Part shown: piece by piece, positions 1,684-64,000 of the stretch | How positions within the stretch are numbered: the stretch's first letter is position 1 | Layout of the letters: every line of letters begins with the position of its first letter | IMG/VR virus record: IMGVR_UViG_3300020147_000065 | Span: 1-64,000 of that record | Strand: one strand, 5' to 3' | DNA: 64,000 nucleotides | Position numbers and translations under genes: made by a program | Notes under the pieces: model-generated | Told to the model about the DNA's origin: nothing | Seen by the model: only the letters and a program-made list of their open reading frames with translations | Databases searched by the model: none

Positions 1684-2348
1684 ACACACAAAAAGCACAA
1701 GAGGCCGTAAAGGACTTTGGCCCTAAAGAAGTCCAGCACTATATTCCTTACTGGGAAGCCATTACACCAAAGACAGACGAAGAAGTTTTTAGACGTTGGC
1801 TGTTCGCTTATCTTTCTATACATACCACATGGGAATCGAACGTGCGCGGATACGAAATGCTCAAAGATTTATCATGGTGGAACGATAAGCAGATGCTACT
1901 TGATAAGTTAATCCTTTCCAAGTGCGGTATGCAAAATGCCAGACAGAAATATATATGGCAATTCCGCGAACAATTTGAAAAGAATCCGTCCTATTATGGT
2001 AAGATTTCTGATTCGTGGATTAAGACAAGAAACAAGCTGACAGAAGAATGTCATGGTATCGGTATTACTAAGGTTTCATTTGTCTTGGAAATGTGCCACC
2101 CGTTAGATGCCCAAGTGGTTTGCCTTGATACTCATTTATTACAACTTTATGAGATTACAGGCACAAAAACCAAAGCACAGGTGCAAACCTATCACGACGC
2201 AGAAGAACATTGGTTGAACATGAGTAACGGAAAGGGTATCGCTCCATATATCCTGCGCTCGGCTTTTTGGGACAAGAAACAAGGGTATGAGGATAATGAC
2301 TATTGGGCGTATGTATTTACGCCCAATGGGAAACCAACCACGGGCTGA
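1680..2348 (+). CDS. HhH-GPD family DNA glycosylase (archaeal/Thermotoga Ogg-like)
   Basis: HhH motif GIGITKVSFVL with the catalytic-position Lys, followed by VVCLDTHLL (AILDRHIL-like Asp). Confidence 0.7.
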   Translation: MNTQKAQEAVKDFGPKEVQHYIPYWEAITPKTDEEVFRRWLFAYLSIHTTWESNVRGYEMLKDLSWWNDKQMLLDKLILSKCGMQNARQKYIWQFREQFEKNPSYYGKISDSWIKTRNKLTEECHGIGITKVSFVLEMCHPLDAQVVCLDTHLLQLYEITGTKTKAQVQTYHDAEEHWLNMSNGKGIAPYILRSAFWDKKQGYEDNDYWAYVFTPNGKPTTG

Positions 2349-2363
2349 AAGGTCTTAACTCTT

Positions 2364-2624
2364 ATGGAAATCTACAAGGTCGTTATGACAGTTCATTCGG
2401 ATGCTGCCGGTCAACACAACTTCGTGGTTAAAACCGCGCAAAGTGGAGACATTGCTGCATCCTTTTTTAATGAAGTATTACTCGACCCAGATTTACATAT
2501 AGATGACGACGAAAAGGCATCAGCCCTGTCAATCCTTGACCCGCAAGACCGTTATGTTATCTGGATAAATCTTAACGAGTTTAACGGTGAGCCTTTTCTG
2601 GTGTTAGGTGATTATAGAGCCTGA
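2364..2624 (+). CDS. hypothetical protein
   Basis: ORF in coupled run. Confidence 0.6.
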   Translation: MEIYKVVMTVHSDAAGQHNFVVKTAQSGDIAASFFNEVLLDPDLHIDDDEKASALSILDPQDRYVIWINLNEFNGEPFLVLGDYRA

Positions 2625-2806
2625 TGGACAACCGCACACTAACTTGTGATCAAGCCAGAGAACTTCAATTTCAGATTAGAGAGAATCTACGTTTCTACGA
2701 AGACACAGGTAATCTTGAATATCTTGAAAACGCATATCGGCACACCACGGAATTAAGGCTTCTGCTAGGTAATAGAGTTGCCGTCGAAAAGAGGAATTTA
2801 CAGTGA
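2624..2806 (+). CDS. hypothetical protein
   Basis: TGATG coupling. Confidence 0.55.
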   Translation: MDNRTLTCDQARELQFQIRENLRFYEDTGNLEYLENAYRHTTELRLLLGNRVAVEKRNLQ

Positions 2807-3051
2807 CCTTAATTATTGCTTTGTTTACAGTCGTGTTTGTCTTTCTATTTTTATATTTCCCTTTACTTTCATTCTATTCTCTTGTAATGTATGCTGGTTA
2901 TTACCACCTACAACTACATTTCTTCCCCCAGTGGCCGGAAATAGAATGGTTTACTTTCTTTTGGGTAATCATAATGATTTATATGACCGGCAGATTTATT
3001 GCAGCTATGTTTGGGAAGGAAAACGTGACGATCACTCGCTTTCTAAGGTAA
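2803..3051 (+). CDS. hydrophobic membrane protein
   Basis: two or three hydrophobic stretches; GTGA overlap. Confidence 0.6.
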   Translation: MTLIIALFTVVFVFLFLYFPLLSFYSLVMYAGYYHLQLHFFPQWPEIEWFTFFWVIIMIYMTGRFIAAMFGKENVTITRFLR

Positions 3052-3077
3052 AAGGACGCTCTTCGGGGCGTCCTTTT
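3051..3077 (+). terminator. intrinsic terminator
   Basis: AAAGGACGC / GCGTCCTTTT stem around a CTTCGG-containing loop. Confidence 0.8.
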
Positions 3078-3091
3078 CCTTGCCCCCCCCC

Positions 3092-3120
3092 TTGCTCACC
3101 TTCATTTTAATTGATATAAT
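3092..3120 (+). promoter_or_regulatory. sigma70-type leaderless promoter preceded by a C9 tract
   Basis: TTGCTC-17-TATAAT; ATG 6 nt after the -10. Confidence 0.7.
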
Positions 3121-3126
3121 CTAAGT

Positions 3127-3372
3127 ATGAAAATCAAATTCGAACAAACAACATTTGGTGAATTAAAAAGCGGAGATTGGTTTAGTTTATCCGCTCTAAT
3201 AAGAACTATCCCACAAGGTTTACCTACTATGGGTAATGTAAAACTTGCTAAAGAAGGTATTGCAGCAAAAGAGAGTGAGAGAATGGGGCCGTTTAATGTG
3301 GTTTCATTTGATGGCCGATTCAGGACTTTTCGAGACGATGAAAAGGTCTATAAATTGACTTTGGAGAAATAA
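3127..3372 (+). CDS. hypothetical protein
   Basis: ORF directly behind promoter. Confidence 0.65.
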   Translation: MKIKFEQTTFGELKSGDWFSLSALIRTIPQGLPTMGNVKLAKEGIAAKESERMGPFNVVSFDGRFRTFRDDEKVYKLTLEK

Positions 3373-3809
3373 TGTATCCACATAATACTCTAACTAAAAT
3401 TCCTAAACCCGAACCACCCGATTACGAAAAGAGCACAGGTCAGCTTGGTGGTAAACTCGAAGAATTTAATCCTATTCATCGCCGCTTTCCAGGCCCATAT
3501 AAACGTAAGGTAGAGTTTAGTGCTCTACGTTTTCCAGGTTATCCACACTACCACGTTAAACTCAAAGAGGAACACAATACTGTTTTTAGTGTAGATGATG
3601 CAGGGAATCGTTATTGGGTAAATCCGTGGAATGACCCCGAAGGCGAGGGTAAAATCTTTCAGTGGAAAAAGACGGCTTCTTTGCGTCGTGCTCACTTTTG
3701 GGCAAAGCTCAAATTCGCAAAAGAGTTCGACCCTGAGACTCACGAACTCGTTTTTGAAGATAGAGCTTTACAGGCTCGTGTAAACAGACTATTAAGACAA
3801 GGCGATTAA
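3372..3809 (+). CDS. hypothetical protein
   Basis: TAATG coupling, 145 aa. Confidence 0.65.
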   Translation: MYPHNTLTKIPKPEPPDYEKSTGQLGGKLEEFNPIHRRFPGPYKRKVEFSALRFPGYPHYHVKLKEEHNTVFSVDDAGNRYWVNPWNDPEGEGKIFQWKKTASLRRAHFWAKLKFAKEFDPETHELVFEDRALQARVNRLLRQGD

Positions 3810-3825
3810 TAGTCTGCCCCCCCCC

Positions 3826-3854
3826 TTGCGCACCAACCTCGACTACGATATAAT
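3826..3854 (+). promoter_or_regulatory. sigma70-type leaderless promoter preceded by a C9 tract
   Basis: TTGCGC-17-TATAAT; ATG at 3862. Confidence 0.7.
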
Positions 3855-3861
3855 TTATTCC

Positions 3862-4416
3862 ATGAGCGAACAAAAGACCACTAACTTTAAGGCCGGTGAG
3901 GACGTAATTGTTTACAGCGATTTCCTCAACCAAAGGCGACCACTGGGAAAAGCCATGCTCGACGAGCGTTTAGGCGATTACCCCACAAAGAACCAATGGG
4001 CACTCGCACAGTGGCGAGTGCGATTCTATGACGAACGCGGCAACTTGGAAACAGACGACGATAAAAAGCCTGTCTTTTCTACCATGCCGATTCTTGAAGT
4101 TGGCAAGCCAAACGAGAATCGCCCACAATCTGAGGACTATTCGCAATATGGAGCGAAGCCCGAAGCTGACGAAACTGGCGAAGTTGTTGAAAAGAAAAAG
4201 CCGGAGAAGAAAGCAGCCCCATCAACCGGCAGTCGTGGACGTGGACGCCCCGAAGTCCCAATGAATGAAATCAAGGCCCGTAACATTGTGCGACAACTCA
4301 AAGATAAAAAGCGCGATGGGCGACTTGATGAAGCTGTGGACTACCTTTTAAATGAGTGTCCAAAGGCCGCAAAATTCGTAGAAAAATACCTTGAATACCT
4401 TGACGGCAGCTTCTAA
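3862..4416 (+). CDS. hypothetical protein with AT-hook-like RGRGRP motif
   Basis: start moved to ATG 3862 behind the promoter; Lys/Glu-rich linker. Confidence 0.65.
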   Translation: MSEQKTTNFKAGEDVIVYSDFLNQRRPLGKAMLDERLGDYPTKNQWALAQWRVRFYDERGNLETDDDKKPVFSTMPILEVGKPNENRPQSEDYSQYGAKPEADETGEVVEKKKPEKKAAPSTGSRGRGRPEVPMNEIKARNIVRQLKDKKRDGRLDEAVDYLLNECPKAAKFVEKYLEYLDGSF

Positions 4417-4428
4417 TCTTGGTATAAT
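4400..4428 (+). promoter_or_regulatory. sigma70-type promoter for rIIA
   Basis: TTGACG-17-TATAAT; AGGAG RBS before ATG 4465. Confidence 0.85.
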
Positions 4429-4464
4429 TTAATTGTCACATTGAAAGGAATTTAGGAGAAAACA

Positions 4465-6636
4465 ATGAGTATTCCCATCGCTGAAAAAGAGATTGTTGTG
4501 CTGTCCAACATGGACTTTGAGAGTGCCGAAATGGGCATTGCAGAAGAAGATGTGCCGACTATCATCGCTATTCTGCGCGACAAACTTTATCGCAACAAAG
4601 AACGTGCAATCGTGCGCGAATATAGCACCAATGCGCGGGACGCAATGATTGAGTGCGATAATGGTAGTAATCCGTTTGAGGTTTGGCTACCCACGCGGTT
4701 AGACCCTGTTTTCAAAGTGCGCGACTATGGCACAGGTTTATCGGAAACTGCAATTAACCAAATCTTTCGTTTCTTGGGTAAGTCCACGAAGCGCGACAGC
4801 AATTTGGTAAACGGTCAGCTTGGCATCGGTGCGAAGTCCGGTCTTGCTCTTGCGAACCAGTTTAACGTAACGTCCTATGTGGATGGACAAGTGACCTTTT
4901 ACGTTGTTTTGAATGACCCATCGCGCAAAGGTCGCATTGATAAAATTGCAGGGCCATTACCTACTGATGAACCTAACGGCGTTTTAATCGAAGTGCCTAT
5001 CCCTGCTGCCAGCATCGAAAAAATGCACCAAGAGGCTTCGTTTGTTTACAAGTATTTCGATTTGAAACCAACGATTCACGGTTTAGACGAAAGCAAATAT
5101 CCTTTAACCCGTCCTAAACCAGTGTTGGAAGGTAAGACTTGGCGAATTGTGGGCGGCGAATCGGTTGCCATTATGGGCAACGTGGCCTATCCTATCGGTT
5201 CTGACTTCATCGTGCCGGAAGTTCACGGTGAAGAAGGCGAAAAGTGGAAGCAGTTTTTGAGTGCCGGTGTTGAGATTGACTTTCCTATCGGCTCAATCGA
5301 ATTTGCCCCATCCCGCGAAGAACTGAGCTACAACGAACATACTATCAATGTTTTAATTGATACAATCAAGTCGGCTATCAAGGAAGCTGCCGACCTGATT
5401 ACTGACAAACTGAAAAACGCGCCTAACCGTTGGGAAGCCATGTGTTTAGTTTCAGCGTTGCAAGGTGAGTTAGGTGAGTTTGGCCGTAATCTCAAATCTG
5501 TTATTGGTAAAATCCAGTGGCAAGGAAAAGAGGTAGGCAATACAATTCACGTTGGCTATAATCACAATGCCGCAACTTCGGGTTGGATGGTGCGCGAGTA
5601 TCAGAACAACACCTATACAAACCGTTTCTCTCACACCGGCAATCCTTCAAGCCTTTATGCTTCGCATAAAACACTCTTGATTGAGATTGACGATAAGAAC
5701 GGCAAAGCGCAACCGGCGAAGATGAAGTATTACTGTGAGCAGAACGGCTATGAGCGTGTATATTTGCTCTCTTTCACTTCGGCAACTGCGCGGCAACTGT
5801 TTTATAAGTCGCACTTAGAAGATATTCCTGTAATGATGCAAACGGCTTTGCCGAAAGCGCCGCCATCAAGCAGTGGTTCGGGTGGAAGCGGCCCCGTAAA
5901 CCCAAAGCATAGCTTACAGGTATTCACTTTCAACTATTCGACAAGTAGCACCGCAAGCGAATCATGGGAGCAGGAAACCGTTGATGCTGTGAACGGTAAA
6001 GGCTACTACGTTGTTATTGACCGTTTCAACGTGCAAAAGGAACACGGCACCGAACTTTACCCTAAAGACTACCTTGATACTTTGGAGTTCGCACACAAGT
6101 TGCTCGGCTTCAACTGGAAAAAGGAAACCATTATTGGTGTCAAGCGCAGTTTCTTTGACAATAAGAAACTGGGTAAGAACTGGAAACCGTTGTTTGAATA
6201 TCTGCGCGATGCTGCTAAAAAGGTGCTGGAAAAGCAAAAGCAGTTTCAGGTGGCTATTGACTACTCAGAATATATGACGCATAGGGCACAGACGTTTGAG
6301 TGCTTTCAAAAAGAGTTAGTCAATCTACAATATCCTGATGAAGCGATGGGCACTTATTTGGCCGCAGCACAAGAGGCGTATTTCCGCCACGATAAAGTGA
6401 CGAAGGGCAAGTTAAACGAGGCCAAAACCCTGTTTGATAAAATCGGCTACCCGCTTCACTACACTTACACGCCGACTTATTTGTTTTCTGACGGTGCCGA
6501 AAAGATTACAGAAAGTTACCCGCTTATGGGCGTAGTCGGAACGGGTTATTACTCGCATGGCTACGCTCAAAACGTGGAGAAGTTTATCCACTATATCAAC
6601 TTGTGCGATGCCGAAACGGTGTCCAAACGTCTGTAA
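4465..6636 (+). CDS. rIIA: rIIA-like protein with N-terminal GHKL (Hsp90-like) ATPase domain
   Basis: LYRNKERAIVREYSTNARDA, VRDYGTGLS, GQLGIGAKS motifs; 723 aa; directly followed by rIIB. Confidence 0.85.
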   Translation: MSIPIAEKEIVVLSNMDFESAEMGIAEEDVPTIIAILRDKLYRNKERAIVREYSTNARDAMIECDNGSNPFEVWLPTRLDPVFKVRDYGTGLSETAINQIFRFLGKSTKRDSNLVNGQLGIGAKSGLALANQFNVTSYVDGQVTFYVVLNDPSRKGRIDKIAGPLPTDEPNGVLIEVPIPAASIEKMHQEASFVYKYFDLKPTIHGLDESKYPLTRPKPVLEGKTWRIVGGESVAIMGNVAYPIGSDFIVPEVHGEEGEKWKQFLSAGVEIDFPIGSIEFAPSREELSYNEHTINVLIDTIKSAIKEAADLITDKLKNAPNRWEAMCLVSALQGELGEFGRNLKSVIGKIQWQGKEVGNTIHVGYNHNAATSGWMVREYQNNTYTNRFSHTGNPSSLYASHKTLLIEIDDKNGKAQPAKMKYYCEQNGYERVYLLSFTSATARQLFYKSHLEDIPVMMQTALPKAPPSSSGSGGSGPVNPKHSLQVFTFNYSTSSTASESWEQETVDAVNGKGYYVVIDRFNVQKEHGTELYPKDYLDTLEFAHKLLGFNWKKETIIGVKRSFFDNKKLGKNWKPLFEYLRDAAKKVLEKQKQFQVAIDYSEYMTHRAQTFECFQKELVNLQYPDEAMGTYLAAAQEAYFRHDKVTKGKLNEAKTLFDKIGYPLHYTYTPTYLFSDGAEKITESYPLMGVVGTGYYSHGYAQNVEKFIHYINLCDAETVSKRL

Positions 6637-6644
6637 TTAGTAGA

Positions 6645-6682
6645 GGGCTACCCTTGACAGGGTAGCCCGAAACTGGTATAAT
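6645..6682 (+). promoter_or_regulatory. sigma70 promoter with the -35 hexamer as loop of a 9-bp inverted repeat
   Basis: GGGCTACCC-TTGACA-GGGTAGCCC, TATAAT at 6677-6682 (17 nt spacer). Confidence 0.85.
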
Positions 6683-6700
6683 TTCAGTTAGGAGAAAACA

Positions 6701-7579
6701 ATGGAACAATTACCTTGCATCTATTCACCGGATAAATCCGCAACCGTGTTTTTGGGCAGCAAAGCTGTAACGGTTGTGGCCGGACAACCGCACTTCCGCG
6801 AAGTGCAGGACGCGATTATCGCGCAGGACTGGGAAGCTGTAGCCCGTTTGGTGGACGTTATCACTTCGATTAAAGCCTATTTAGTTAAAGACGGCGATTT
6901 CGAGATTTCCCGCGAAGAAATAAAATACCGCAACGAACCTGTTAAGGGTGTTATCGCTGACCGTATTTTGAGCTTCATGGAAAAGGGTTATCCTTCGGCT
7001 CCGCTTATCGAATTTCTGCGTAATTTAATGAGCAATCCGTCTTTCAACTCGCGTAATCAGCTTTACACGTTCTTAGAGCGTTGGAATCTGCCTATTACAC
7101 CAAACGGCAACTTCTTGGCTTACAAAGCCGTTCGCAATGACTACATGAGCATTGCTTCTGACCGCAATACCGGCGAACACGTTGATAACTCGATTGGTCG
7201 CGTCGTAGTTATGGACAGGGCAAAGATTGACGATAACCCGAAAAATCACTGCTCTGCCGGTTTACACGCCGGAGCCTTACAATACGTCCGTTGGTATGGT
7301 GGCATTTCTCACGGTGGAGCGATTGAAGGCGGAAACCGCGCAATCATCGTAGAGATTAACCCTGCTGACGTGGTTAGCGTTCCTAACGACCATGACTGCC
7401 AAAAGATGCGCGTCTGCAAGTATAAGGTGATTGGTGACTACATTGGCGAATTGCCTACCGATTACACCGACGCTGCCGTTTATGACGGTTATGAGGACGG
7501 TGACGAGGGCGACAGCTACGACGAGGACGATTATTGTCCTGATTGTGGCGAACCTTACGAAATCTGCAACTGTGACTAA
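6701..7579 (+). CDS. rIIB: rIIB-like protein
   Basis: PITPNGNFLAYKAVRNDY, CSAGLHAG, INPADVVSVPND, KMRVCKYKV are typical rIIB motifs. Confidence 0.9.
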   Translation: MEQLPCIYSPDKSATVFLGSKAVTVVAGQPHFREVQDAIIAQDWEAVARLVDVITSIKAYLVKDGDFEISREEIKYRNEPVKGVIADRILSFMEKGYPSAPLIEFLRNLMSNPSFNSRNQLYTFLERWNLPITPNGNFLAYKAVRNDYMSIASDRNTGEHVDNSIGRVVVMDRAKIDDNPKNHCSAGLHAGALQYVRWYGGISHGGAIEGGNRAIIVEINPADVVSVPNDHDCQKMRVCKYKVIGDYIGELPTDYTDAAVYDGYEDGDEGDSYDEDDYCPDCGEPYEICNCD

Positions 7580-7600
7580 ATTCCTGTGTGACAAGAAACT

Positions 7601-7625
7601 GGGGAGCCTTCGGGCTTCCCTTTTT
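7601..7625 (+). terminator. intrinsic terminator
   Basis: GGGGAGCC-TTCG-GGCTTCCC followed by T5. Confidence 0.85.
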
Positions 7626-7778
7626 CTGCGCACGAGGGGGGGGGCAGACAGGAAAATGCAAACACACCACAATACTCTAAATAAACTACCCCACATTACT
7701 TTTTCAACTATTTAGCCCCAAAACATTGGAAGATGACGTTGCCGGGTAAACCGGACAAAAATAAAAAAGAGAAATACG

Positions 7779-8246
7779 ATGGCGAGACAACTATATCTGG
7801 TCTGTGACCAATGCAAACGAAAGAGCCTGGAATTTCAAGCGATCAACTGGATCGAGACGCGTTTAGCGGGGATTAATGCTATTACCACTGATATGGCACC
7901 CGTGGATGGTTTGTTCTGTAGTAGTGATTGTGTTGTGCGTTATTTTATCGCCAACCACGGGGCTAAGGCTACGAACCCATTCGATGACGAAGACGGTATC
8001 ACAGAAGTTGAAAAGGAAAAGGCCGCTACGCGTGAGGCTGCGCGGCCTAACCCTGTATTCGGCCCATTATTAAAGGTTGAGCATGGGGTAGCTTCTACTT
8101 CTGATGTTCCTCCCGAACTACAGAAGCGTTACAATGCTGACGGTACCCCAGCCGAAACAGGAGCAGGTTATGCTTTCCCATCCGGTGGTAAGCCAACGGG
8201 CGCTAACCTCGATAAACAACTCAATCCAAAGGACTGGTTAGAATGA
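7779..8246 (+). CDS. hypothetical protein with CxxC...FCSxxC zinc-binding motif
   Basis: CDQC and FCSSDC. Confidence 0.65.
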   Translation: MARQLYLVCDQCKRKSLEFQAINWIETRLAGINAITTDMAPVDGLFCSSDCVVRYFIANHGAKATNPFDDEDGITEVEKEKAATREAARPNPVFGPLLKVEHGVASTSDVPPELQKRYNADGTPAETGAGYAFPSGGKPTGANLDKQLNPKDWLE

Positions 8247-8449
8247 GTGAGCTAAGCGAATCCGCGCAATATAAATTGGGCCGGCATCATGCTTTAATTA
8301 AATCGGCCCCACGTTCTGCTAACAAAAGTTACATGGAGGGCTACAATAGTGTCCCTGTTTACGTAGCCCCACCATTCAAACCCAAACCAATTGAACCAGA
8401 CAAAGACGGGGAGTACCCCGGACTATTTAGCCACTGGCTGGAGGATTAA
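8243..8449 (+). CDS. hypothetical protein
   Basis: coupled ORF; resembles 8901..9086. Confidence 0.6.
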   Translation: MSELSESAQYKLGRHHALIKSAPRSANKSYMEGYNSVPVYVAPPFKPKPIEPDKDGEYPGLFSHWLED

Positions 8450-8886: not shown

Positions 8887-8900
8887 AAAGGAAAGATACA

Positions 8901-56494: not shown

Positions 56495-56509
56495 TAGGAG
56501 TAAACGTCT

Positions 56510-56986: not shown

Positions 56987-56988
56987 AT

Positions 56989-57063: not shown

Positions 57064-57070
57064 TTAATAC

Positions 57071-57349: not shown

Positions 57350-58806
57350 AAGAGCGAGATAAAGAACGAGTAATATCTAACTTAGCAGTGGAAAGCGGAA
57401 GCCTCGCACTGTCAATGATGTATGAAGAATGTGCAGATGCGGCTGTAGAAAAATTAACGCCAGAAGATTTTTATTGGCCTCATCACCAAGTTATTTTCGA
57501 TGTAATTCGTGACCTATTTAAACAGAACAGACACATTGACCACAACATCGTCTCAGATGAACTTCAAAAGCGAGGAAAATTAGAAGAAGCTAAAGGAAAA
57601 GTATATGTTTCCAACCTTGTAGACCTTGCCCCAGCTAAAGAAGCTACTGATGAATACATTAAAGCTATCCAGGGGTGGTCTTTACTCCGAGAGATTGACG
57701 AAGGTGCGCGAGAAACACACTCAAGGATTACACTTGGATACCTGAGTGATCCACTTGAGGCTATTAACCAGTTGGGTACAAGACTTGATAAAGCTACAAC
57801 TCGTCTTCGTCGCGCTAAGGTTGAGACAGTTGCTTCTATATGTGATGAAATTCTTGGAGACATTGCTCGCGCAATGGCTACAGGAATTGACGAGTCTGGT
57901 ATTCCTACCGGATTTGAAGGCTTCGATGATTTGACCGGTGGTGTGCAACCAGGTGAAAACCTTGTAGTTGCTGCCCGTACATCAGTTGGTAAAACAGCAT
58001 TCGTTCTTCAGATGGCAGCACAGATTGCCATCAACCAAAAGAAACCAGCATTAATCTTCTCTCTGGAAATGCCTAAGAAGAAATTAATGTTTCGTTTGAT
58101 TTGCTCTTATGCCAAAGTGAACTCACGCGATGCTCGTCGAGGTAAGATTACTCAAGAGCAATACGATAAGATGCAGGAAGCAGCTAAAATGCTTAGTGAA
58201 TGCCCTCTTCTTATTGATGATAACACATCTGCCACATTAATTGAGATGATGGCAGCTACCAAAAAATTGATTAGGGATCACGGAGAACTCGGTTGTGTTG
58301 TAATTGACAACCTCCCTTTGGTTTCTCCGACAAACCCAGGTGCAGATGGTCATGTGCAGACAGCGGAACTAAGCCGTGGACTAAACCGTTTCTGTATGGA
58401 TGTAGGAGTACCGTTGGTAACGGTTACTCAGCTTAACCGAGCAACAGAAGAAAAGACGGATAAAAAACCAACTTTATCTAACATCGCCGGTTCTGACTGT
58501 GTGGCACGAGATGCGGCTACTGTGGCATTGTTATGGCGACCAGAATACTACGACGACAAGGTTGCCAAGACACAGCAACAGGAGCGTTACGTCAACGCGA
58601 AACGAGAAGAACAAAGACAGTTGATTACGCCTCAACCTTTGGTAGTGCCTGAACAAAAAACTGTTGTAATTGTAGATAAACAACGCAATGGCCCAACGGG
58701 AACATTTAACCTGTGGTTTGATATGAACTGCTCGTATTTCTCAGACAAGCCAACAATGGAGAGTTTCAGTTACACTGACGATAAGCGCAACGACTTCTTT
58801 GACTGA
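57322..58806 (+). CDS. dnaB: DnaB-like replicative helicase
   Basis: N-terminal DnaB domain (DFYWPHHQVIF), IPTGF..FD...GG, AARTSVGKT, FSLEM, TQLNR, KQRNGPTG; GGAGG RBS. Confidence 0.95.
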   Translation: MGANTVITVEERDKERVISNLAVESGSLALSMMYEECADAAVEKLTPEDFYWPHHQVIFDVIRDLFKQNRHIDHNIVSDELQKRGKLEEAKGKVYVSNLVDLAPAKEATDEYIKAIQGWSLLREIDEGARETHSRITLGYLSDPLEAINQLGTRLDKATTRLRRAKVETVASICDEILGDIARAMATGIDESGIPTGFEGFDDLTGGVQPGENLVVAARTSVGKTAFVLQMAAQIAINQKKPALIFSLEMPKKKLMFRLICSYAKVNSRDARRGKITQEQYDKMQEAAKMLSECPLLIDDNTSATLIEMMAATKKLIRDHGELGCVVIDNLPLVSPTNPGADGHVQTAELSRGLNRFCMDVGVPLVTVTQLNRATEEKTDKKPTLSNIAGSDCVARDAATVALLWRPEYYDDKVAKTQQQERYVNAKREEQRQLITPQPLVVPEQKTVVIVDKQRNGPTGTFNLWFDMNCSYFSDKPTMESFSYTDDKRNDFFD

Positions 58807-58817
58807 GGAGAAAACAA

Positions 58818-59414
58818 ATGGAATTAGTACTGGTTTTGTTTCGGTTCATGGATACCGACTCACGCGTAACTCATGAGGCAGGGGATTATCTCTACTACAA
58901 TGATAAAGTTATGCAAATTCGCGCGGATGCAAGTGGCATCCGAAAACTTATAGTTCGACTAAAAGACGGTAATAAGGTTGTTCTTGAGACACGAGGTACT
59001 CGTGTCGTTAATTACAAGCCTGGCGAGTGGGAAGAGCATGTTAAGTCAATTGCTTCTGATGCGTTCGCTGCTCACCGTGAAGAGAATGAGGAACAGGCTC
59101 AGAACGTAGAGAGCCGTGTTCAGGAACAGCTTCAGGTAGCCCTGAGTGCTGAACCAGACCCCGTAGAAGTTCTGGTCGAAGACGAAGTAGCTGTAGTAGC
59201 TCCCAGCTTTGGTCCATCAAACGTAGATACTACGAATGAATCCAAGCCGGACGAATTACTCTCTGCTCCATCTCCTGTACCCGCAGGTGATGATGTAGTC
59301 GAACCAGAGACAACTGAAGAATCGCAATCCACGGAGGAATCAAAAGCTGACGAAGCTCCGGTTCCAGTAAGTGAAGCGGCCTTCGGCGGAAGACGCAAGC
59401 AACCGCGCAATTAA
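58818..59414 (+). CDS. hypothetical protein with acidic disordered tail
   Basis: GAGGAG RBS. Confidence 0.7.
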   Translation: MELVLVLFRFMDTDSRVTHEAGDYLYYNDKVMQIRADASGIRKLIVRLKDGNKVVLETRGTRVVNYKPGEWEEHVKSIASDAFAAHREENEEQAQNVESRVQEQLQVALSAEPDPVEVLVEDEVAVVAPSFGPSNVDTTNESKPDELLSAPSPVPAGDDVVEPETTEESQSTEESKADEAPVPVSEAAFGGRRKQPRN

Positions 59415-59419
59415 CCAAT

Positions 59420-59479
59420 AAAGGGCCAGGAGATTTTCTTCTCCTGGCCCTTGACTTTTAGTGTGTATGTTGGTATAAT
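59420..59479 (+). promoter_or_regulatory. terminator hairpin abutting a sigma70 promoter
   Basis: AAGGGCCAGGAG / CTCCTGGCCCTT stem overlapping TTGACT 59451; TATAAT 59474. Confidence 0.8.
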
Positions 59480-59514
59480 TTACTGTAGCTTTATAAATAA
59501 GGAGTCCATTTCAA

Positions 59515-60150
59515 ATGGCAAAAGCAGCAGTAGCACAGGCAGAGGATAACTCTGCAACCCCTGAAAAAGTCAAGCGTAACCACGGCCAGGAATTTAAAGA
59601 GGCAGCCGGTGACGTAGCAAAACAGCTTGAAATTATTGACGATTTCGTAGCAAACGTAATGCGTAAAGGTGAAGATTACGGTATCATTCCTGGTACAAAT
59701 AAACCTTCTCTTTACAAAGGTGGAGCAGAAAAGCTTTTAGGCTTGCTCGACGCGACTCCTCGATTCGAAATCCTCGAATACATCTTCGATCCCGATAAAG
59801 TTGTTACCACTCTTGAGTGGGATAATGCAACTAAAACAAAGAAACCAAAAGAAAGTAGAGTCGGTTTAGCTTCTTTTACTTTTAAGTGCGTCCTCGTGGA
59901 TGGCGACGAAAAAGAACTTGGTTCAGGCTTTGGTCATTGTAATTCCCTTGAAGGGAAGTATGCCAAACAAGGTGCAGTAAACGTAGCTAACACTGCGTTG
60001 AAAATGTCGAAGAAACGTTCATTGGTGGACGCCATTCTAACAGCTACTCGTATTTCTGGTCAGTTCACGCAGGACGTGGAAGACATGGACTTGGGTGGAG
60101 GTAGTAGTGGAGGAGGACGAAAGCCTTCCAGCGACGATTTTGAACTCTAA
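59515..60150 (+). CDS. putative single-strand annealing/recombination protein
   Basis: EDYGIIPGTNKPSLYKGGAEKL and NTALKMSKKRSLVDA...FTQDVED, a phage family I associate with SSAPs; acidic tail. Confidence 0.5.
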   Translation: MAKAAVAQAEDNSATPEKVKRNHGQEFKEAAGDVAKQLEIIDDFVANVMRKGEDYGIIPGTNKPSLYKGGAEKLLGLLDATPRFEILEYIFDPDKVVTTLEWDNATKTKKPKESRVGLASFTFKCVLVDGDEKELGSGFGHCNSLEGKYAKQGAVNVANTALKMSKKRSLVDAILTATRISGQFTQDVEDMDLGGGSSGGGRKPSSDDFEL

Positions 60151-60159
60151 CCGAAGGAG

Positions 60160-60186
60160 AAAAGGGGGCTTCGGCCCCCTTTTTTG
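60160..60186 (+). terminator. intrinsic terminator
   Basis: AAGGGGGC-TTCG-GCCCCCTT + T tract. Confidence 0.88.
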
Positions 60187-60188
60187 TT

Positions 60189-60728
60189 ATGATTGACCTC
60201 TTTACTGGTGCCGGTAAATGGCACCCTTACAGCAAACTTCTTGCTGAAATGGTAGGTTCAGCTACAGCCTCCATATTCCTACAATCCGTGATAGAGAAGT
60301 GGGATAATTTTAAAGAACCATTCTACTGGTTCGATGAGCCAACTGCACATAAAAACTACGTTCGTAATCGAAGTTGGAGAGAAAACCTGGGCTTTCATGA
60401 AGAAGACCTAATGCTGGCACTCTCTAAGGTTGGCACTAAGATAACAGAAAAGAGGCCGCGTAATTTAATTATCTCTGATAACACGGCGGCTTTCACACCT
60501 AAACGTAAACTTTTAAATGCTCCTCACCTTGTCTTATACCGATGGGACTCAGGTAAGAAGTTGATGTGGTATGAATTGAATGTCAGCTTGTTAGAGTCGG
60601 CATTGTCAACGCACGTAATGGCTCTCCATTCACTCTGCTTGACCACACCTAACTTTGAATTACGAGAACAAGAGCGTTTGAACAAACTTAGAGAAGAACA
60701 TCCCGACTGGTTTGAGGGGAAAAAGTAG
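60189..60728 (+). CDS. putative replication-initiator N-terminal HTH-like protein
   Basis: LAEMVGSATASIFLQ...W...SWRENLGF pattern. Confidence 0.4.
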   Translation: MIDLFTGAGKWHPYSKLLAEMVGSATASIFLQSVIEKWDNFKEPFYWFDEPTAHKNYVRNRSWRENLGFHEEDLMLALSKVGTKITEKRPRNLIISDNTAAFTPKRKLLNAPHLVLYRWDSGKKLMWYELNVSLLESALSTHVMALHSLCLTTPNFELREQERLNKLREEHPDWFEGKK

Positions 60729-60732
60729 GTGC

Positions 60733-61002
60733 CACATGGCAGTAGACAGACATAATCTCTCATTCAAAGAAAAGGATTGGAAAGAACTGAATGGTGTAGC
60801 CAATTCTTACAAACTTGAACTGAGTGCATTTCTACGCGCAGTACTATTTCTTTTTCGTGATCACAAAGATGTAATTAAACCTTTATTGGTGGAGATTATT
60901 GATAAACATCGAAGTGAAATAGTGTTGAGTCGTGGTAGAAAAAACAAACCGCTCCCTCTTGACTTTAGTGGTCTTGAGGGTATTTTTGGAGCAAACAAAT
61001 GA
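60733..61002 (+). CDS. putative RHH DNA-binding protein
   Basis: RHNLSFKEKDWKEL...LSAFLRAVL; start set at the ATG of MAVDRH, coordinate approximate. Confidence 0.45.
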   Translation, partial: HMAVDRHNLSFKEKDWKELNGVANSYKLELSAFLRAVLFLFRDHKDVIKPLLVEIIDKHRSEIVLSRGRKNKPLPLDFSGLEGIFGANK

Positions 61003-61382
61003 AAATTTTAGCAATCGAATACGAAAGAAAAGTGGGCGATGAAACAATTCGCGTTCAAGCGGAAGTCACAGGTGATGAAACACCTGAACAGGCTTATTTT
61101 GGTGTCCGTGATTGGGTTTCTGATAGAGTAAAGGAAACCGAGACACATGAGCAGCAGCGAGTTGCTCAACAAGAAGAAGAACAACGGAAAGCCGAGGAAG
61201 CTGCCAAACGTGAGGAGTTAAAAACCAAAGCCGCACAAACACTTGCAGAGTTAAAGGCTTCTGGATTTAATGAAGAAGATATTGCTGCCATCGTAGCAGC
61301 GCAAGCGGCTGTAGCTGCTTCCGAGGCCGCACCAGAACCTCAGAATAGTTCACTACCAGGTCAAGAAACAACTGAACTTTAA
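60999..61382 (+). CDS. coiled-coil hypothetical protein
   Basis: ATGA overlap. Confidence 0.65.
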   Translation: MKILAIEYERKVGDETIRVQAEVTGDETPEQAYFGVRDWVSDRVKETETHEQQRVAQQEEEQRKAEEAAKREELKTKAAQTLAELKASGFNEEDIAAIVAAQAAVAASEAAPEPQNSSLPGQETTEL

Positions 61383-61393
61383 GGAAAATAATA

Positions 61394-62323
61394 ATGGCAT
61401 TTAATGCAACAGTGATAGCTGACTCTATCAATCCCCGTGGTGTGCGTATGATTACGATGGAATTAACCTTTCCACGGGTTGTATTAGCCGAGTTCAACAC
61501 CCACAGGGCTTTCTCTCGTAACGCTGCATCTTCCCGTGCTATCCCGGTCGAAAAGATGATTCAGCGTGTTCTCGATGATCCTTTTATTCCTGTCTTCCAG
61601 AAGAATAAAAAGGGTATGCAATCAACCGAACCTCTCTCCGTTGAAGAGACTGTGGCCGCTACCTCTATTTGGCTACGGCAGCGCGATGATGCTGTCGCTG
61701 CGGTTAGAAAACTCATTGGTAAATACGAGGTAAACGAACGCGGGGAACATTGGAGTAATCCATGGAAAGATGGAATCACCCTCGACGTTCATAAACAATT
61801 CGCCAACCGTCTGCTTGAGCCGTGGATGTGGACGACTGATATTGTGACGTTTACGGACGTTGCAAATTACGCTAATCTGCGCTTTTCCCCACATGCCGAG
61901 CCTTCGATGGCTCGGATTACCGAGATGGGCCTTGAGCAGATTGCTTTATCTGTTCCAAAGAAACTTCGCAAAGGTCAATGGCATTTACCCTTGATTTTTG
62001 AGGAAGACTATGATATGCTTAGGAAAGAGCAGATCACTTTCGACGATTTAATTAAAATTTCTGTGGGCCGATGTGCCAGAGTTTCTTACTTGACACACGA
62101 TGGCCGGAGAGATTTACAGGCAGACATTGATTTACACGACCGATTACTCGCTAACGGACATATGTCTCCATTCGAGCATCAAGGTCGTGCAATGAACTCT
62201 AAAGTGAAGCGTTCTGGAAATCTTGTTGGCTTCGAACAGTACCGTAAGATGCTTCCTAACGAAAACAGAACGTATTTCAAATGTACTCTACCAAGTGGTC
62301 GTGAATTAATTTTGGAGAGATAA
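61394..62323 (+). CDS. thyX: FAD-dependent thymidylate synthase
   Basis: EFNTHRAFSRNAASSRAIP (RHR..S...S.R motif), ARVSY, HMSPFEH. Confidence 0.92.
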   Translation: MAFNATVIADSINPRGVRMITMELTFPRVVLAEFNTHRAFSRNAASSRAIPVEKMIQRVLDDPFIPVFQKNKKGMQSTEPLSVEETVAATSIWLRQRDDAVAAVRKLIGKYEVNERGEHWSNPWKDGITLDVHKQFANRLLEPWMWTTDIVTFTDVANYANLRFSPHAEPSMARITEMGLEQIALSVPKKLRKGQWHLPLIFEEDYDMLRKEQITFDDLIKISVGRCARVSYLTHDGRRDLQADIDLHDRLLANGHMSPFEHQGRAMNSKVKRSGNLVGFEQYRKMLPNENRTYFKCTLPSGRELILER

Positions 62324-62324
62324 A

Positions 62325-63038
62325 ATGCCCTATTATGAAAAGGCACCTCTGCGCTTAAAGGCAGAGCAATTTCGATTTATTGATGGACCAGACGGCGACG
62401 AAACTCGCCGTCTGGCTCAATCACTTGGACTCATACAACGATATGAGGTTTATCGTGATGGAGACTTTATTGATAACTCTTCACCTTGGGAAGTCCAGAC
62501 ACTTGAAGGTTGGGTTACGGTAAACGATGGTGACTATGTTATCATTGGTATAGAGGGTGAAAAGTATCCTCGTAGCGAAGAAGATTTTCAAAAGAATTAC
62601 ACAAAGGTTGAGGGTGAAGAGAACTTATATGAACGTAAGCCCATATGTGTAAAAGCTTTCCAGTGGTGGAAGAATGGAGATCATCCAGAGGATGAGTCGG
62701 AGCTAATTACTGGTTCTGATGGTGAAATGTTTCTTAGTGAAGGTAAGATAGTCAGACGATTTAATCATCCTAACATTTCATCGCAAGAAAAGTGTGAAGT
62801 TTGTGATCACGTAATGGGTAATCATGGTTGGATTGATAGGGGTGAAAACGGTTTACGTGTTTGCCCAGGTGATATGATTATCCAAACTTACGGTGAAGAA
62901 CCTTATCCATGCAAGCCGCGGATTTTCATAAAAACATATTACCTACTTACGTTTGAACAATTTCCGAAGCCTGTGGGAGAAGATGAAGATGAATTTGGAA
63001 CAGAAGGGCCGATTAGTAGTGAAGCATCTGAGGCATGA
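62325..63038 (+). CDS. hypothetical protein with two copies of a PGDY-like phage domain
   Basis: TLEGWVTVNDGDYVI...YPRSEEDFQKNY and VCPGDMII...YPCKPRIFIKTY. Confidence 0.7.
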   Translation: MPYYEKAPLRLKAEQFRFIDGPDGDETRRLAQSLGLIQRYEVYRDGDFIDNSSPWEVQTLEGWVTVNDGDYVIIGIEGEKYPRSEEDFQKNYTKVEGEENLYERKPICVKAFQWWKNGDHPEDESELITGSDGEMFLSEGKIVRRFNHPNISSQEKCEVCDHVMGNHGWIDRGENGLRVCPGDMIIQTYGEEPYPCKPRIFIKTYYLLTFEQFPKPVGEDEDEFGTEGPISSEASEA

Positions 63039-63564
63039 CCCTCATTCTCTTGGATTTAATTCTCTTTTAACCGGTGGCTATCTCCCCGTGGATAGCTTAT
63101 TAAATTCTATCTGGAAATACAAGGGTGTACGTATAACCAGAGATGAATTAAACGAGATCGTCGAAACCAATAACAAACAACGTCTTTCCTATGATACAAC
63201 TGGTACTCTAATCAGAGCAAACCAGGGGCACAGTATTCCTGTGGACTTGCAGTTGACTCCTGAGACTCCACCGGCTGTACTATATCATGGTACAGATGAA
63301 AAATATGTTGACTCAATTAATGAGACTGGTATATACAAGAGTTCTCGTCATGCCGTTCATTTATCCGAAGATGTACATACCGCAGGTAAAGTAGGCGCTC
63401 GTCACAGCGGAAACCCATATGTTCTTGGGGTAGATGCCGAGCAAATGTATAAAGACGGATACTTGTTCTACAAATCAGAAAATGGCGTGTGGCTTACTGA
63501 TTTTGTGCCACAGGGATATTTACTAAGAGAGGAACATGGATATGAACCGATTCGATTTTATTGA
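62983..63564 (+). CDS. kptA: RNA 2'-phosphotransferase (Tpt1/KptA)
   Basis: HLRHDP, KQRLS, IRANQGHS, LYHGT, VHLS, NGVWLTDFVP. Confidence 0.95.
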   Translation: MKMNLEQKGRLVVKHLRHDPHSLGFNSLLTGGYLPVDSLLNSIWKYKGVRITRDELNEIVETNNKQRLSYDTTGTLIRANQGHSIPVDLQLTPETPPAVLYHGTDEKYVDSINETGIYKSSRHAVHLSEDVHTAGKVGARHSGNPYVLGVDAEQMYKDGYLFYKSENGVWLTDFVPQGYLLREEHGYEPIRFY

Positions 63565-63802
63565 GAGGATCGAACGTGAACAATTTAGGGCCGTATTATA
63601 CCTCAGAAACAATACTCGTCATAACTTCCATGTGATCGCCAAAAAGGATGAATCTGTGGTAGTTGGTGATGAAATTGAATATGAACCATACTGTTTTAAT
63701 TTTGGTTATTTTGTGAAAAAGGTGACAGAAGATGAAGAGGAAATAGCTCGACTCAAAGCTCTTGGGACGCGACGCTCACATTGCGGCTCTGAGAGCAGGT
63801 AA
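63536..63802 (+). CDS. hypothetical protein
   Basis: overlapping ORF; GAGGA RBS. Confidence 0.55.
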   Translation: MDMNRFDFIERIEREQFRAVLYLRNNTRHNFHVIAKKDESVVVGDEIEYEPYCFNFGYFVKKVTEDEEEIARLKALGTRRSHCGSESR

Positions 63803-64000
63803 AACAGTGAGTTTCCGTGAAGGCGGAAACTCTATGACACCACGGATTAAACATAGACAGAAGTGTACTTATACACCCGTGGTTGGCCCCAGCGACGTGA
63901 AGAAAGGTGATGCTGTCTTTTGTAAGGTAGGACACCGATACTTCACACACTTGATTACAGCAATCAAGGGAGATCAATATCAAATCAGCAACAACCACGG

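What the first reader, a model, noticed from the sequence alone, without database searches (positions are those of the whole stretch)
2338..63882. Genome-wide dispersed split motif CCCGTGG-NNN-G(C): candidate unknown cis-acting DNA system
Seen: I counted 40 exact CCCGTGG/CCACGGG heptamers by hand (a minimum). Plus-strand CCCGTGG starts at 45, 7899, 10116, 10552, 11871, 26101, 32663, 34413, 40292, 42246, 43375, 45485, 47992, 50347, 54367, 61434, 63085, 63876. Plus-strand CCACGGG starts at 2338, 7955, 8517, 11125, 11349, 15274, 16315, 18216, 20652, 24853, 27402, 33679, 35979, 39573, 41512, 41887, 42412, 46261, 49380, 51518, 55605, 61472. A zero-order model at my estimated ~42% GC gives about 3. 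In the CCCGTGG orientation, 37 of 40 have G exactly 4 nt downstream and 24 have GC. The three exceptions (45, 24853, 41887) equal the chance expectation. One-mismatch variants also keep the NNNGC tail (15089, 29400, 59893). The motif occurs intergenically and inside genes in all three frames (Pro-Val-Asp, Asn-His-Gly, Pro-Arg-Gly, Pro-Trp), with no strand or transcription polarity, so it is not codon-driven. Inference: a duplex-DNA site under positive selection about every 1.7 kb. Phages usually deplete host restriction sites, so enrichment points to a site for a phage (or co-opted host) protein. Candidate roles: genome organisation or segregation, self/non-self marking against a phage nuclease, site-specific nicking or modification, or recombination/uptake (HIP1/DUS-like). 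I do not recognise it as a known Chi, KOPS, parS or DUS sequence.
Basis: partly seen in the sequence, partly recalled or inferred. Interest (0 to 1): 0.93.

Follow-up and report, generated by a model that had tools for sequence, protein, structure and literature searches.

The report
Genome-wide asymmetric DNA motif, jumbo phage
A 221-kb soil phage carries about one copy every 1.8 kb of a sharply defined one-sided DNA word (CCCGTGG-NNN-G), mostly inside genes whose protein sequences fit it more often than chance allows and partly inside early promoters, so a sequence-specific protein very probably reads it, in a way that resembles but does not match known phage repressor-site networks.

Summary
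38 carry G four bases downstream: 38 copies of the 11-mer against 0.8 expected.

The window is the first 64 kb of a 221-kb soil jumbo phage. I recovered 178.6 kb, which holds 98 canonical sites (47 +, 51 -).

The motif is not codon-driven. A synonymous shuffle gives 10, and the proteins have 75 motif-compatible positions against 42 after residue shuffling.

Two facts are new:
- Intergenic copies concentrate in the 16-17 bp spacer of sigma-70-type early promoters, always co-directional (8 of 47 poly-C promoters, none reversed). A distant relative has the same arrangement.
- Orientation matters. Same-orientation copies avoid each other within about 1.5 kb (P = 0.0002), and five of the six neighbour pairs under 250 bp are convergent.

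The motif recurs only in a small clade. That clade alone encodes a 184-aa AT-hook protein next to rIIA.

Best reading (0.4): the motif is the site of a clade-specific DNA-binding regulator, an operator at early promoters with a dispersed, direction-sensitive intragenic network. It is closest to mycobacteriophage stoperators and P1 C1 operators but fails their orientation rule. Chi-like, nicking or modification, and priming signals remain open.

The parts
2333..11882 (.). Nine canonical 12-bp sites (CCCGTGG-NNN-G-N), listed by low coordinate and strand: 2333-, 7899+, 7950-, 8512-, 10116+, 10552+, 11120-, 11344-, 11871+
15269..27408 (.). Six canonical sites in the tail and tail-fibre module: 15269-, 16310-, 18211-, 20647-, 26101+, 27397-
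   Evidence: gene context
32350..35985 (.). Five canonical sites with alternating orientation: 32350-, 32663+, 33674-, 34413+, 35974- (the last lies inside the sigma-factor gene)
39568..51524 (.). Twelve canonical sites, almost perfectly alternating: 39568-, 40292+, 41507-, 42246+, 42407-, 43375+, 45485+, 46256-, 47992+, 49375-, 50347+, 51513-
54367..63887 (.). Six canonical sites: 54367+, 55600-, 61434+, 61467-, 63085+, 63876+
7899..7961 (.). Convergent close pair (+ then -, 56 bp apart) inside one ORF. The arms do not form a hairpin.
42246..42418 (.). Convergent pair, 166 bp apart
61434..61478 (.). Convergent close pair (38 bp apart) at the 5' end of the ThyX-like gene
45..51 (+). Heptamer without the downstream G. 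It lies 10 bp upstream of a C11 tract. Two more tail-less heptamers lie at 24853-24859 (-) and 41887-41893 (-).
15089..15100 (+). One-mismatch variant that keeps the tail. Others of this kind start at 4686-, 26834+, 29400-, 34725+, 43219-, 55525+, 57664- and 59893+.
3862..4416 (+). Candidate reader: a 184-aa protein with a small beta domain, an invariant GRGRPE AT-hook and a C-terminal three-helix bundle. It is encoded directly upstream of rIIA and expressed from a poly-C promoter as a leaderless mRNA.
   Evidence: Homologues occur in all three motif-bearing relatives and in none of 81 motif-free rIIA loci. The family has only 7 members among 5.8 billion proteins.
44155..45048 (-). Second clade-restricted candidate: a 297-aa nuclease with an Hjc-like Endonuc_Holl domain
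   Evidence: homologues in L080 and L161 only
38113..38871 (+). HNH endonuclease with an unassigned 190-aa N-terminal part. It is a possible nickase, but nothing links it to the motif.
3083..3120 (+). Poly-C promoter: C9, then TTGCTC, a 17-bp spacer and TATAAT, with an ATG 6 nt after the -10. It has no motif in its spacer. A second one lies at 3817-3854. These belong to the promoter class whose spacers hold the motif elsewhere on the contig.

Best explanation
CCCGTGG-NNN-G(C) is the recognition site of a sequence-specific DNA-binding protein that belongs to this small phage clade. It carries about 19 bits, is one-sided and spans one helical turn.

At a subset of early promoters the site lies between the -35 and -10 hexamers, always pointing with transcription. 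A bound protein there must exclude or re-shape RNA polymerase, so these copies act as operators.

The other roughly 90% of copies are kept by selection inside ORFs all over the genome. They form a dispersed network that works in a direction-dependent way. By inference they act as roadblocks or markers for something that travels along the DNA.

Shown: the motif, its selection, its promoter-spacer subclass, its orientation rules and its restriction to one clade.
For: Sharpness of the site.
- Eight invariant positions, with only weak tolerance at C1 and C3.
- An A/T-rich NNN and a GCTAA-like 3' flank.
- This fits one protein reading a major groove, the next minor groove and the next major groove.

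Selection at the DNA level.
- 41 heptamers against 10.4 after synonymous shuffling.
- 75 amino-acid-compatible positions against 42.4 +/- 6.7 in residue-shuffled proteins, with 32 realised.
- No relation to gene starts or stops.

Link to promoters.
- 20 of 98 sites lie in the 7.6% of non-coding DNA.
- 8 of 47 poly-C promoters hold the motif in the 16-17 bp spacer, all forward and none reversed. I estimate about 0.3 would be expected at the genome-wide site density.
- Further non-poly-C promoters do the same, at contig positions 153803, 155630 and 177801.
- Other intergenic DNA is not enriched beyond the genome average.
- The distant relative L080 has TTGACA-N4-motif-N6-TATAAT followed by a leaderless ATG.

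Orientation dependence.
- 67 runs against 49.9 +/- 4.9, P = 0.0003.
- Same-orientation pairs under 1 kb: 11 against 21.3, P = 0.0002.
- The effect appears both in the window (P = 0.006) and in the sequence beyond 64 kb (P = 0.046).

Restriction to one clade.
- L080 has 8 of 8 heptamers with the G tail in 22 kb, against about 0.16 expected.
- L161 has 2 sites and L164 has 1.
- 81 other rIIA loci are not enriched.

A matching clade-restricted DNA-binding candidate exists.

Precedent. Phage regulators with many dispersed asymmetric sites are known: 20-30 stoperators or operators in Cluster A mycobacteriophages (PMC6550527, PMC9283540) and 22 C1 operators in P1 (PMC8546580).
Against: - About 80% of copies are intragenic and not promoter-like. 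Only 1 of 78 has both a TTG upstream and a TAnnnT downstream.
- Their orientation is not tied to transcription: 32 same, 46 anti. That tie is the defining property of stoperators.
- About 120 copies per genome, at a cost to protein sequence, is far more than any known operator network.
- No classical repressor, integrase or partition gene was seen in the Pfam hits of the 178 kb examined.
- Only 8 of 47 early promoters carry the motif, and its register in the spacer varies.
- The model does not explain why same-orientation copies avoid each other.
- The AT-hook candidate rests on co-occurrence in four related genomes and a low-confidence model (pLDDT 57). Neither a fold search nor a sequence search against solved structures matched any known DNA-binding domain.
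Confidence: 0.4

Rival explanations
1. The motif is a Chi-like 'self' signal. It is read on one strand by an end-processing helicase-nuclease, either host RecBCD/AddAB or a phage enzyme. The enzyme stops degrading and starts recombination. A circularly permuted genome would need both orientations everywhere.
For: - Eight specified bases, as in E. coli Chi, and a GTGG/CGTG core like known Chi words (from my own knowledge of those sequences).
- Equal strand use, and density independent of genes.
- Same-orientation copies are spaced out while opposite ones are not. That is expected if each orientation serves one direction of travel.
- Two assemblies of the phage start at different points, which is compatible with a permuted or circular genome.
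- The phage has a RecA-like gene, endonuclease VII and a RuvB-like gene, so it probably relies on recombination.
Against: - About 45-fold enrichment is far beyond what I know of Chi in any phage.
- The word is gapped and has A/T-rich and GCTAA-like flanks.
- A roughly 30-fold concentration in promoter spacers with fixed direction is not predicted.
- Per-strand spacing still leaves gaps of 15 kb.
- The host is unknown, so the key prediction could not be tested.
Confidence: 0.15
2. The motif is a strand-specific nicking or base-modification site of a phage enzyme, as in T5 or Pseudomonas phage tf nicks, or a site-specific hypermodification.
For: - The site is asymmetric and as sharp as a restriction-enzyme site.
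- The phage encodes HNH endonucleases, and a clade-restricted Hjc-like nuclease is shared with L080 and L161.
- Avoidance of nearby same-strand copies would limit the loss of short single-stranded segments, or deletion between identical cut sites (inference).
- Localised nicks at a consensus are known in phage tf (PMC3517423), and phage HNH enzymes are site- and strand-specific nickases (PMC3592412).
Against: - Nothing requires enrichment of a nick or modification site, let alone at a cost to proteins.
- Convergent pairs 38-67 bp apart would risk double-strand breaks.
- No DNA methyltransferase or base-modification enzyme was found in the 178 kb seen.
- The promoter-spacer preference is unexplained.
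- Only contigs were available, so there is no direct evidence either way.
Confidence: 0.12
3. The motif is a replication signal: either a template recognition site for one of the two Prim-Pol primases, or a loading site for the initiator and helicase. Convergent pairs would then act as bidirectional start zones.
For: - The phage has two Prim-Pol genes, one fused to winged-helix domains, plus a DnaB-like helicase.
- One site per about 3.6 kb per strand is within a few-fold of Okazaki-fragment lengths.
- Redundant same-strand copies are avoided, and convergent close pairs are favoured.
- From my own knowledge, the pRN1 Prim-Pol needs a GTG word in its template.
Against: - Known lagging-strand primases read 3 bases, not 8.
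- Per-strand gaps reach 15 kb.
- The Prim-Pol with winged-helix domains has only three homologues, none on the L080 contig.
- The promoter-spacer preference is not predicted.
Confidence: 0.1
4. One reading: a global regulator or nucleoid protein that the phage clade has co-opted or titrates. It is not a phage protein.
For: - The promoters involved are ordinary sigma-70-type promoters.
- The motif is shared by phages whose rIIA proteins are only 31% identical, which could reflect a shared host lineage.
Against: - The motif tracks a narrow phage clade, together with a clade-specific DNA-binding candidate.
- The host is unknown.
Confidence: 0.1
5. The motif has no function. It spread by molecular drive, as proposed for uptake sequences, or by biased repair or gene conversion.
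For: - Equal orientation, presence in ORFs in all frames, and turnover of positions between relatives resemble DUS and USS.
- In L080 and L161 the word forms terminator-like hairpin stems.
Against: - No drive mechanism is known for a phage of this kind.
- Orientation anti-correlation and a fixed direction in promoter spacers are not expected from drive alone.
- In the target, close pairs do not form hairpins.
Confidence: 0.05

Closest known systems
Operator and stoperator network of Cluster A mycobacteriophages (L5, Bxb1; repressor gp71 family)
   Same: - An asymmetric site of about one helical turn.
- Tens of copies spread over the genome.
- A minority are true operators inside early promoters, and the rest are not promoter-associated.
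- The cognate repressor binds as a monomer, using two domains (PMC6550527, PMC9283540).
   Different: - Stoperators number 20-30. From my own knowledge, they lie mainly in short intergenic gaps.
- Stoperators predominantly point with transcription. Here there are about 120 copies, 80% inside ORFs, with 32 pointing with transcription and 46 against it.
- No immunity repressor, integrase or partition gene was seen.
- This is a 221-kb phage with rIIA and rIIB.
- Neighbouring sites are anti-correlated in orientation.
Dispersed asymmetric C1 operators of phage P1
   Same: One-sided operators with no dyad symmetry. There are 22 of them dispersed over a large phage genome, and they control many separate promoters (PMC8546580).
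   Different: P1 operators are 17 bp long. From my own knowledge, they sit at promoters. They are not driven into coding sequence. No C1-like gene was found here.
Chi sites (RecBCD/AddAB)
   Same: A short asymmetric word of about 16 bits or more, active in one orientation, needed on both strands of a permuted genome, and G/T-rich with a GTGG core.
   Different: Chi is contiguous, host-defined and only mildly over-represented. It has no link to promoter spacers.
DNA uptake sequences (Neisseria DUS, Pasteurellaceae USS)
   Same: Comparable density (about 1 per 1-2 kb), both orientations, and copies inside ORFs where the protein tolerates them. Inverted pairs serve as terminators, as seen in L080 and L161.
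   Different: Uptake sequences are a property of naturally competent bacterial genomes, not of a virus. Close pairs in the target do not form hairpins.
Site-specific nicks of phages T5 and tf
   Same: A strand-specific consensus recurring along a phage genome (PMC3517423).
   Different: There are few sites, and no enrichment or coding cost has been reported. Nicks could not be examined here.

Membership tests
Cluster A stoperator/operator network | Asymmetric site of about 13 bp present in tens of copies across the genome | tested here: met
   An 11-12 bp one-sided motif with 98 canonical copies in 178.6 kb
Cluster A stoperator/operator network | Some copies are true operators inside early promoters | tested here: met
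   8 of 47 poly-C promoters and several other promoters hold the motif in the spacer. Binding itself was not tested.
Cluster A stoperator/operator network | Sites predominantly point with the direction of transcription | tested here: not met
   Intragenic copies: 32 same, 46 anti. Only the promoter subset is co-directional.
Cluster A stoperator/operator network | A cognate immunity repressor and a temperate life style (integrase or parABS) | tested here: inconclusive
   None was found among the Pfam hits of the 178 kb seen. 42.5 kb of the genome was not retrieved.
P1 C1 operators | Asymmetric operators located at the promoters they control | tested here: not met
   Only about 10% of copies are in promoters
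Chi | Over-represented and strand-skewed in the host chromosome, and read by the host RecBCD/AddAB | not testable with these tools
   The host is unknown. The one genome-contig scan returned only distant hits.
Chi | Contiguous word of 5-8 nt | tested here: not met
   7 + NNN + 1 invariant positions, with informative flanks
Chi | Action depends on orientation | tested here: inconclusive
   Same-orientation copies are spaced out and opposite ones are not. This is compatible with orientation-dependent action but is not specific to Chi.
DUS/USS uptake sequences | Inverted pairs forming terminator hairpins | tested here: inconclusive
   Yes in L080 (4961/4980) and L161 (13685). No for the close pairs of the target.
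DUS/USS uptake sequences | The same word saturates a naturally competent host genome | not testable with these tools
   The host is unknown
Strand-specific nick sites (T5, tf) | Interruptions in virion DNA at the consensus | not testable with these tools
   The runs holding the phage are kept only as contigs, so there are no read ends
DnaA box | TTATCCACA-type 9-mer | tested here: not met
   The reverse complement reads GC-Y-A-W-CCAC-GGG. It shares CCAC, but G is invariant where the box has A, and the 5' T positions are not conserved.
HIP1-type iterated palindromes | Palindromic word | tested here: not met
   The motif is asymmetric

The most novel reading that the evidence does not exclude
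The motif is not an operator network. It is a new kind of viral 'self' or guidance signal: a direction-dependent word read by an enzyme that tracks along DNA (a nuclease, helicase, primase or nickase). Selection has driven it to about 120 copies, mostly inside ORFs and against protein-level constraint. Its occurrence in promoter spacers is a secondary use. This would be the first such system described for a virus.
Probability: 0.3. Interest if true: 0.9.

Novelty: new variant of a known kind. Interest (0 to 1): 0.75.

Why it matters
If the reading is right, a lytic-looking jumbo phage runs a one-protein, one-word network about five times larger than any described phage operator system. It pays for this network with amino-acid changes in its own proteins.

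That would make an open question testable: how large phages organise, silence or protect 200 kb of DNA without a nucleus-like shell or base modification.

The motif also gives a simple sequence handle, a 19-bit word plus a 184-aa candidate reader, for a soil phage lineage with no cultured member. The strict orientation rules are a clear phenotype to test by recoding.

Tried and rejected
Explanations rejected:
- Codon, dipeptide or repeat artefact. Rejected by the synonymous shuffle and residue shuffle. The other enriched k-mers are collagen-like tail-fibre repeats.
- Promoter or terminator element as the general explanation. Rejected because there is no relation to gene starts or stops and intragenic copies are not promoter-like.
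- DnaA box. It shares CCAC only.
- Regular spacing. Orientation-blind gaps are Poisson-like, with CV 0.94-0.95.
- Replication-strand polarity. No 10-kb bin shows a strand bias.

Searches that gave nothing useful:
- Close relatives for a synonymous-site conservation test do not exist. Run X2 and the ENA assembly hold the identical phage, with 0 substitutions and 3 indels. The nearest rIIA is 32% identical, and no isolate phage is close.
- Other motif-rich viruses: a 14-mer scan of IMG/VR found only the phage's own contig enriched. A convergent-pair scan returned G+C-rich chance matches and hairpins. 80 metagenome rIIA loci were negative.
- The literature holds no report of the word.
- The structure of the AT-hook candidate has low confidence, and neither a fold search nor a sequence search against solved structures matched anything meaningful.
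- Pfam found no domain in 20 small ORFs.
- One contig look-up failed on a wrong gene start. One returned no DNA for the closest Prim-Pol relative.

Full report
WHAT IS THERE

The window contains 41 exact CCCGTGG/CCACGGG heptamers.

Expectations under four null models are far lower:
- 3.7 +/- 1.7 from dinucleotide shuffles.
- 4.65 from a third-order Markov model, under which this is the most over-represented 7-mer of the window.
- 10.4 +/- 2.3 when synonymous codons are shuffled within each gene, with the five intergenic copies left in place.
- A median of 3 for 140 permuted control heptamers.

In the CCCGTGG orientation, 38 of 41 sites have G at +4 and 24 have GC. The 11-mer CCCGTGGNNNG occurs 38 times against 0.79 expected.

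Single substitutions are barely tolerated. There is weak excess only for A/T at C1 and C3.

A position weight matrix converges on 42 sites and about 19-20 bits. Its consensus is CCCGTGG-W-T-R-G-C, followed by a T/A-rich GCTAA-like flank.

WHERE IT COMES FROM, AND THE GENOME-WIDE PICTURE

The window is bases 1-64000 of IMG/VR contig 3300020147_000065, a 221,108-bp contig from a soil metagenome.

The same phage was assembled independently as an ENA contig of 221,049 bp with a different start point. The two differ only by three indels. It is also present in a second soil run. The genome is therefore complete, and circular or permuted in assembly.

By walking along the contig I recovered positions 1-178,577. 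That stretch holds 106 heptamers and 98 canonical 11-mers, 47 on the + strand and 51 on the - strand. That is one per 1.8 kb, with no strand bias in any 10-kb bin.

Density varies by region:
- Highest in an early-gene array at 150-178 kb, at about 0.8 per kb.
- Lowest in the giant structural genes at 120-140 kb.

IT IS A DNA-LEVEL SIGNAL

- In the window, sites lie in all three frames and on both strands relative to genes: 16 co-oriented, 20 anti, 5 intergenic.
- Over 178 kb the split is 32, 46 and 20.
- Their distance to gene starts or stops is the same as for random positions.
- Orientation-blind spacing is Poisson-like.
- The window's genes contain 75 positions whose amino-acid sequence could encode the 11-mer, and 32 of these are realised. 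Residue-shuffled versions of the same proteins offer only 42.4 +/- 6.7 such positions.

So the proteins offer about 33 more motif-compatible positions than residue-shuffled versions of themselves, which is close to the number of realised sites. The signal is therefore not just a matter of synonymous codon choice.

NEW FACT 1: ORIENTATION MATTERS

Neighbouring copies tend to point in opposite directions:
- 67 runs against 49.9 +/- 4.9 expected, P = 0.0003.
- The effect is present in the window alone (P = 0.006) and, independently, in the sequence beyond 64 kb (P = 0.046).

Its source is a deficit of same-orientation pairs at short range:
- Under 1 kb: 11 against 21.3, P = 0.0002.
- Under 1.5 kb: 21 against 35.3.

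Opposite-orientation pairs are not depleted. Of the six neighbour pairs closer than 250 bp, five are convergent and none is divergent.

A protein for which orientation is irrelevant would make all nearby copies equally redundant. The two orientations therefore appear to do different jobs. I performed several such tests, so the single P values should be read with that in mind. The replication in new sequence is the main safeguard.

NEW FACT 2: A PROMOTER-SPACER SUBCLASS

The contig carries 47 promoters of an unusual type, most of them in the 159-178.5 kb array. Each has a C7-C12 tract abutting a TTGNNN -35, a 16-17 bp spacer and a TAnAAT -10. About half have an ATG or GTG 6-7 nt after the -10, so their transcripts are leaderless.

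- Eight of the 47 hold the motif inside the spacer. All eight point with transcription and none is reversed. From the genome-wide site density I estimate about 0.3 such occurrences by chance.
- Several promoters without a C tract do the same.
- Other intergenic DNA is not enriched above the genome average.
- The register within the spacer varies. This argues for an operator rather than a polymerase-contact element.
- Intragenic copies are not promoter-like. Only 1 of 78 has both flanking hexamer hallmarks.

RELATIVES

No close relative exists. The best rIIA match is 32% identical among 5.8 billion proteins, and no isolate phage is near.

| Locus | Description | Motif content |
|---|---|---|
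| L080 | ENA contig, 81.7 kb; 22 kb retrieved | 8 heptamers, all with G at +4, against about 0.16 expected; one in a TTGACA-N4-motif-N6-TATAAT leaderless promoter; two form a terminator-like hairpin |
| L161 | Same synteny group | 2 sites |
| L164 | Same synteny group | 1 site |
| L078 and 80 metagenomic rIIA loci | Other rIIA-bearing phages | Not enriched |

Positions are not conserved between orthologous genes. The word is therefore maintained by turnover, not by descent.

WHO READS IT

A tblastn comparison of all predicted proteins against motif-bearing and motif-free loci singled out two clade-restricted genes:
- The ORF directly upstream of rIIA.
- An Hjc-like nuclease at 44155-45048.

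The first ORF probably starts at 3862, as a leaderless gene behind a poly-C promoter. It has a conserved small beta domain, an invariant GRGRPE AT-hook and a C-terminal three-helix bundle. Its family has seven members in the whole protein collection, including those of L080, L161 and L164.

A basic minor-groove arm followed by a helical bundle would suit a one-sided site with an A/T-rich centre. This is inference only:
- The model is poor (pLDDT 57).
- Neither a fold search nor a sequence search against solved structures matched any known DNA-binding domain.
- The four genomes are not independent.

Other DNA-handling proteins are unlinked to the motif by any evidence:
- The RuvB-like AAA+ protein with a winged helix at 122-1075.
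- The HNH protein at 38113-38871.
- The Prim-Pol with winged-helix domains at about 96 kb.
- The protein with a weak ribbon-helix-helix match at 54506-55756.

MECHANISM AND COMPARISON

The best-supported account is a sequence-specific DNA-binding protein of this clade. It acts as an operator-binding regulator at a subset of early promoters, and its site has been multiplied across the genome.

The closest known systems are:
- The operator and stoperator network of Cluster A mycobacteriophages, with 20-30 asymmetric sites. Some are promoter operators and most are not promoter-associated. They are bound by a monomeric two-domain repressor (PMC6550527, PMC9283540).
- The 22 dispersed asymmetric C1 operators of P1 (PMC8546580).

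The present case fails the defining orientation rule of stoperators. It is about five-fold larger, lies mostly inside ORFs and shows no sign of lysogeny. I therefore file it as working like such a network, not as a member of one.

The orientation statistics keep three rivals alive that involve an enzyme travelling on DNA:
- A Chi-like anti-nuclease signal.
- Strand-specific nicking or modification.
- A priming or loading signal for the Prim-Pol and DnaB machinery.

None of these predicts the promoter-spacer subclass. None could be tested directly, for three reasons: the host is unknown, only contigs are available, and the collection scans are exhausted.

VERDICT

The finding is real, genome-wide, under selection and restricted to one clade. 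The function is not established. I give the operator-plus-dispersed-network reading 0.4. I give 0.3 to the more novel reading, that the motif is a new direction-dependent viral 'self' or guidance signal.

Noticed in passing
window 3083-3120 and 3817-3854; contig 159,000-178,500 (loci L298, L299, L032): 47 promoters have a C7-C12 tract directly abutting a TTGNNN -35, then a 16-17 bp spacer and a TAnAAT -10. About 40 of them sit in one array of small + strand ORFs, nearly one per gene. I do not know of a poly-C upstream element like this.
   Followed up: partly
same promoters, e.g. window 3120-3129 and 3854-3864; L080 around 20540-20600: 24 of the 47 poly-C promoters have an ATG or GTG 6-7 nt after the -10 hexamer with an ORF of at least 30 codons. 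These are leaderless mRNAs. Other genes have strong AGGAG Shine-Dalgarno sites. This mix may be a clue to the host.
   Followed up: partly
whole contig; ENA ERZ27257321 k141_781850; run X2: The identical phage (0 substitutions, 3 indels, one of 15 nt in a 1807-aa fn3-repeat gene) was assembled in a second study with a different start point. It is also present in a second soil run. The genome is therefore complete, and circular or permuted.
   Followed up: yes
window 52959-54530; contig about 72 kb, 94.5 kb and 100 kb (L289 13600-14250, L291 2049-2873, L292 5538-6320): The phage carries bacterial-type signalling genes: a PAS-PAS-SpoIIE (PP2C) phosphatase, a second PP2C, a CHASE3-domain protein and a GGDEF diguanylate cyclase.
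   Followed up: no
window 46032-48497 and 62953-63564; L289 13010-13603: There is an RNA-repair gene set: an RlaP nucleotidyltransferase, a HAD_SAK_2 protein, a NUDIX protein, a Tpt1/KptA 2'-phosphotransferase and a PNKP-type HAD. This suggests a defence against host tRNA or mRNA nicking.
   Followed up: no
window 20765-22846 and 24000-25130: Collagen-like repeats in tail-fibre genes account for the other enriched 10-11-mers, such as CCCTGAGCACC and CCCTGTGGTCC.
   Followed up: yes
L080 4961-4986; L161 about 13680-13715: In the relatives the motif forms the stem of terminator-like hairpins between genes, as uptake sequences do in Neisseria. The close pairs in the target genome do not form hairpins.
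   Followed up: partly
window 1680-2348 and 122-1075: A protein like an Ogg-type HhH DNA glycosylase and a RuvB-like AAA+ protein with a C-terminal winged helix lie next to the rIIA/rIIB pair. The RuvB-like gene is syntenic in relatives with and without the motif.
   Followed up: no
contig 67,849-68,850 and about 95,500-97,000 (L289 10001-11002; L292 8412-9896): There are two Prim-Pol genes. The larger (494 aa) is fused to MarR/TrmB-like winged-helix domains and has only three homologues in the protein collection.
   Followed up: partly
contig about 146-149 kb (L298 1178-3850) and L299 17958-18482: An 890-aa protein has a weak LAGLIDADG hit, which may mark an intein or a homing endonuclease. 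There are further free-standing HNH genes in the early array.
   Followed up: no
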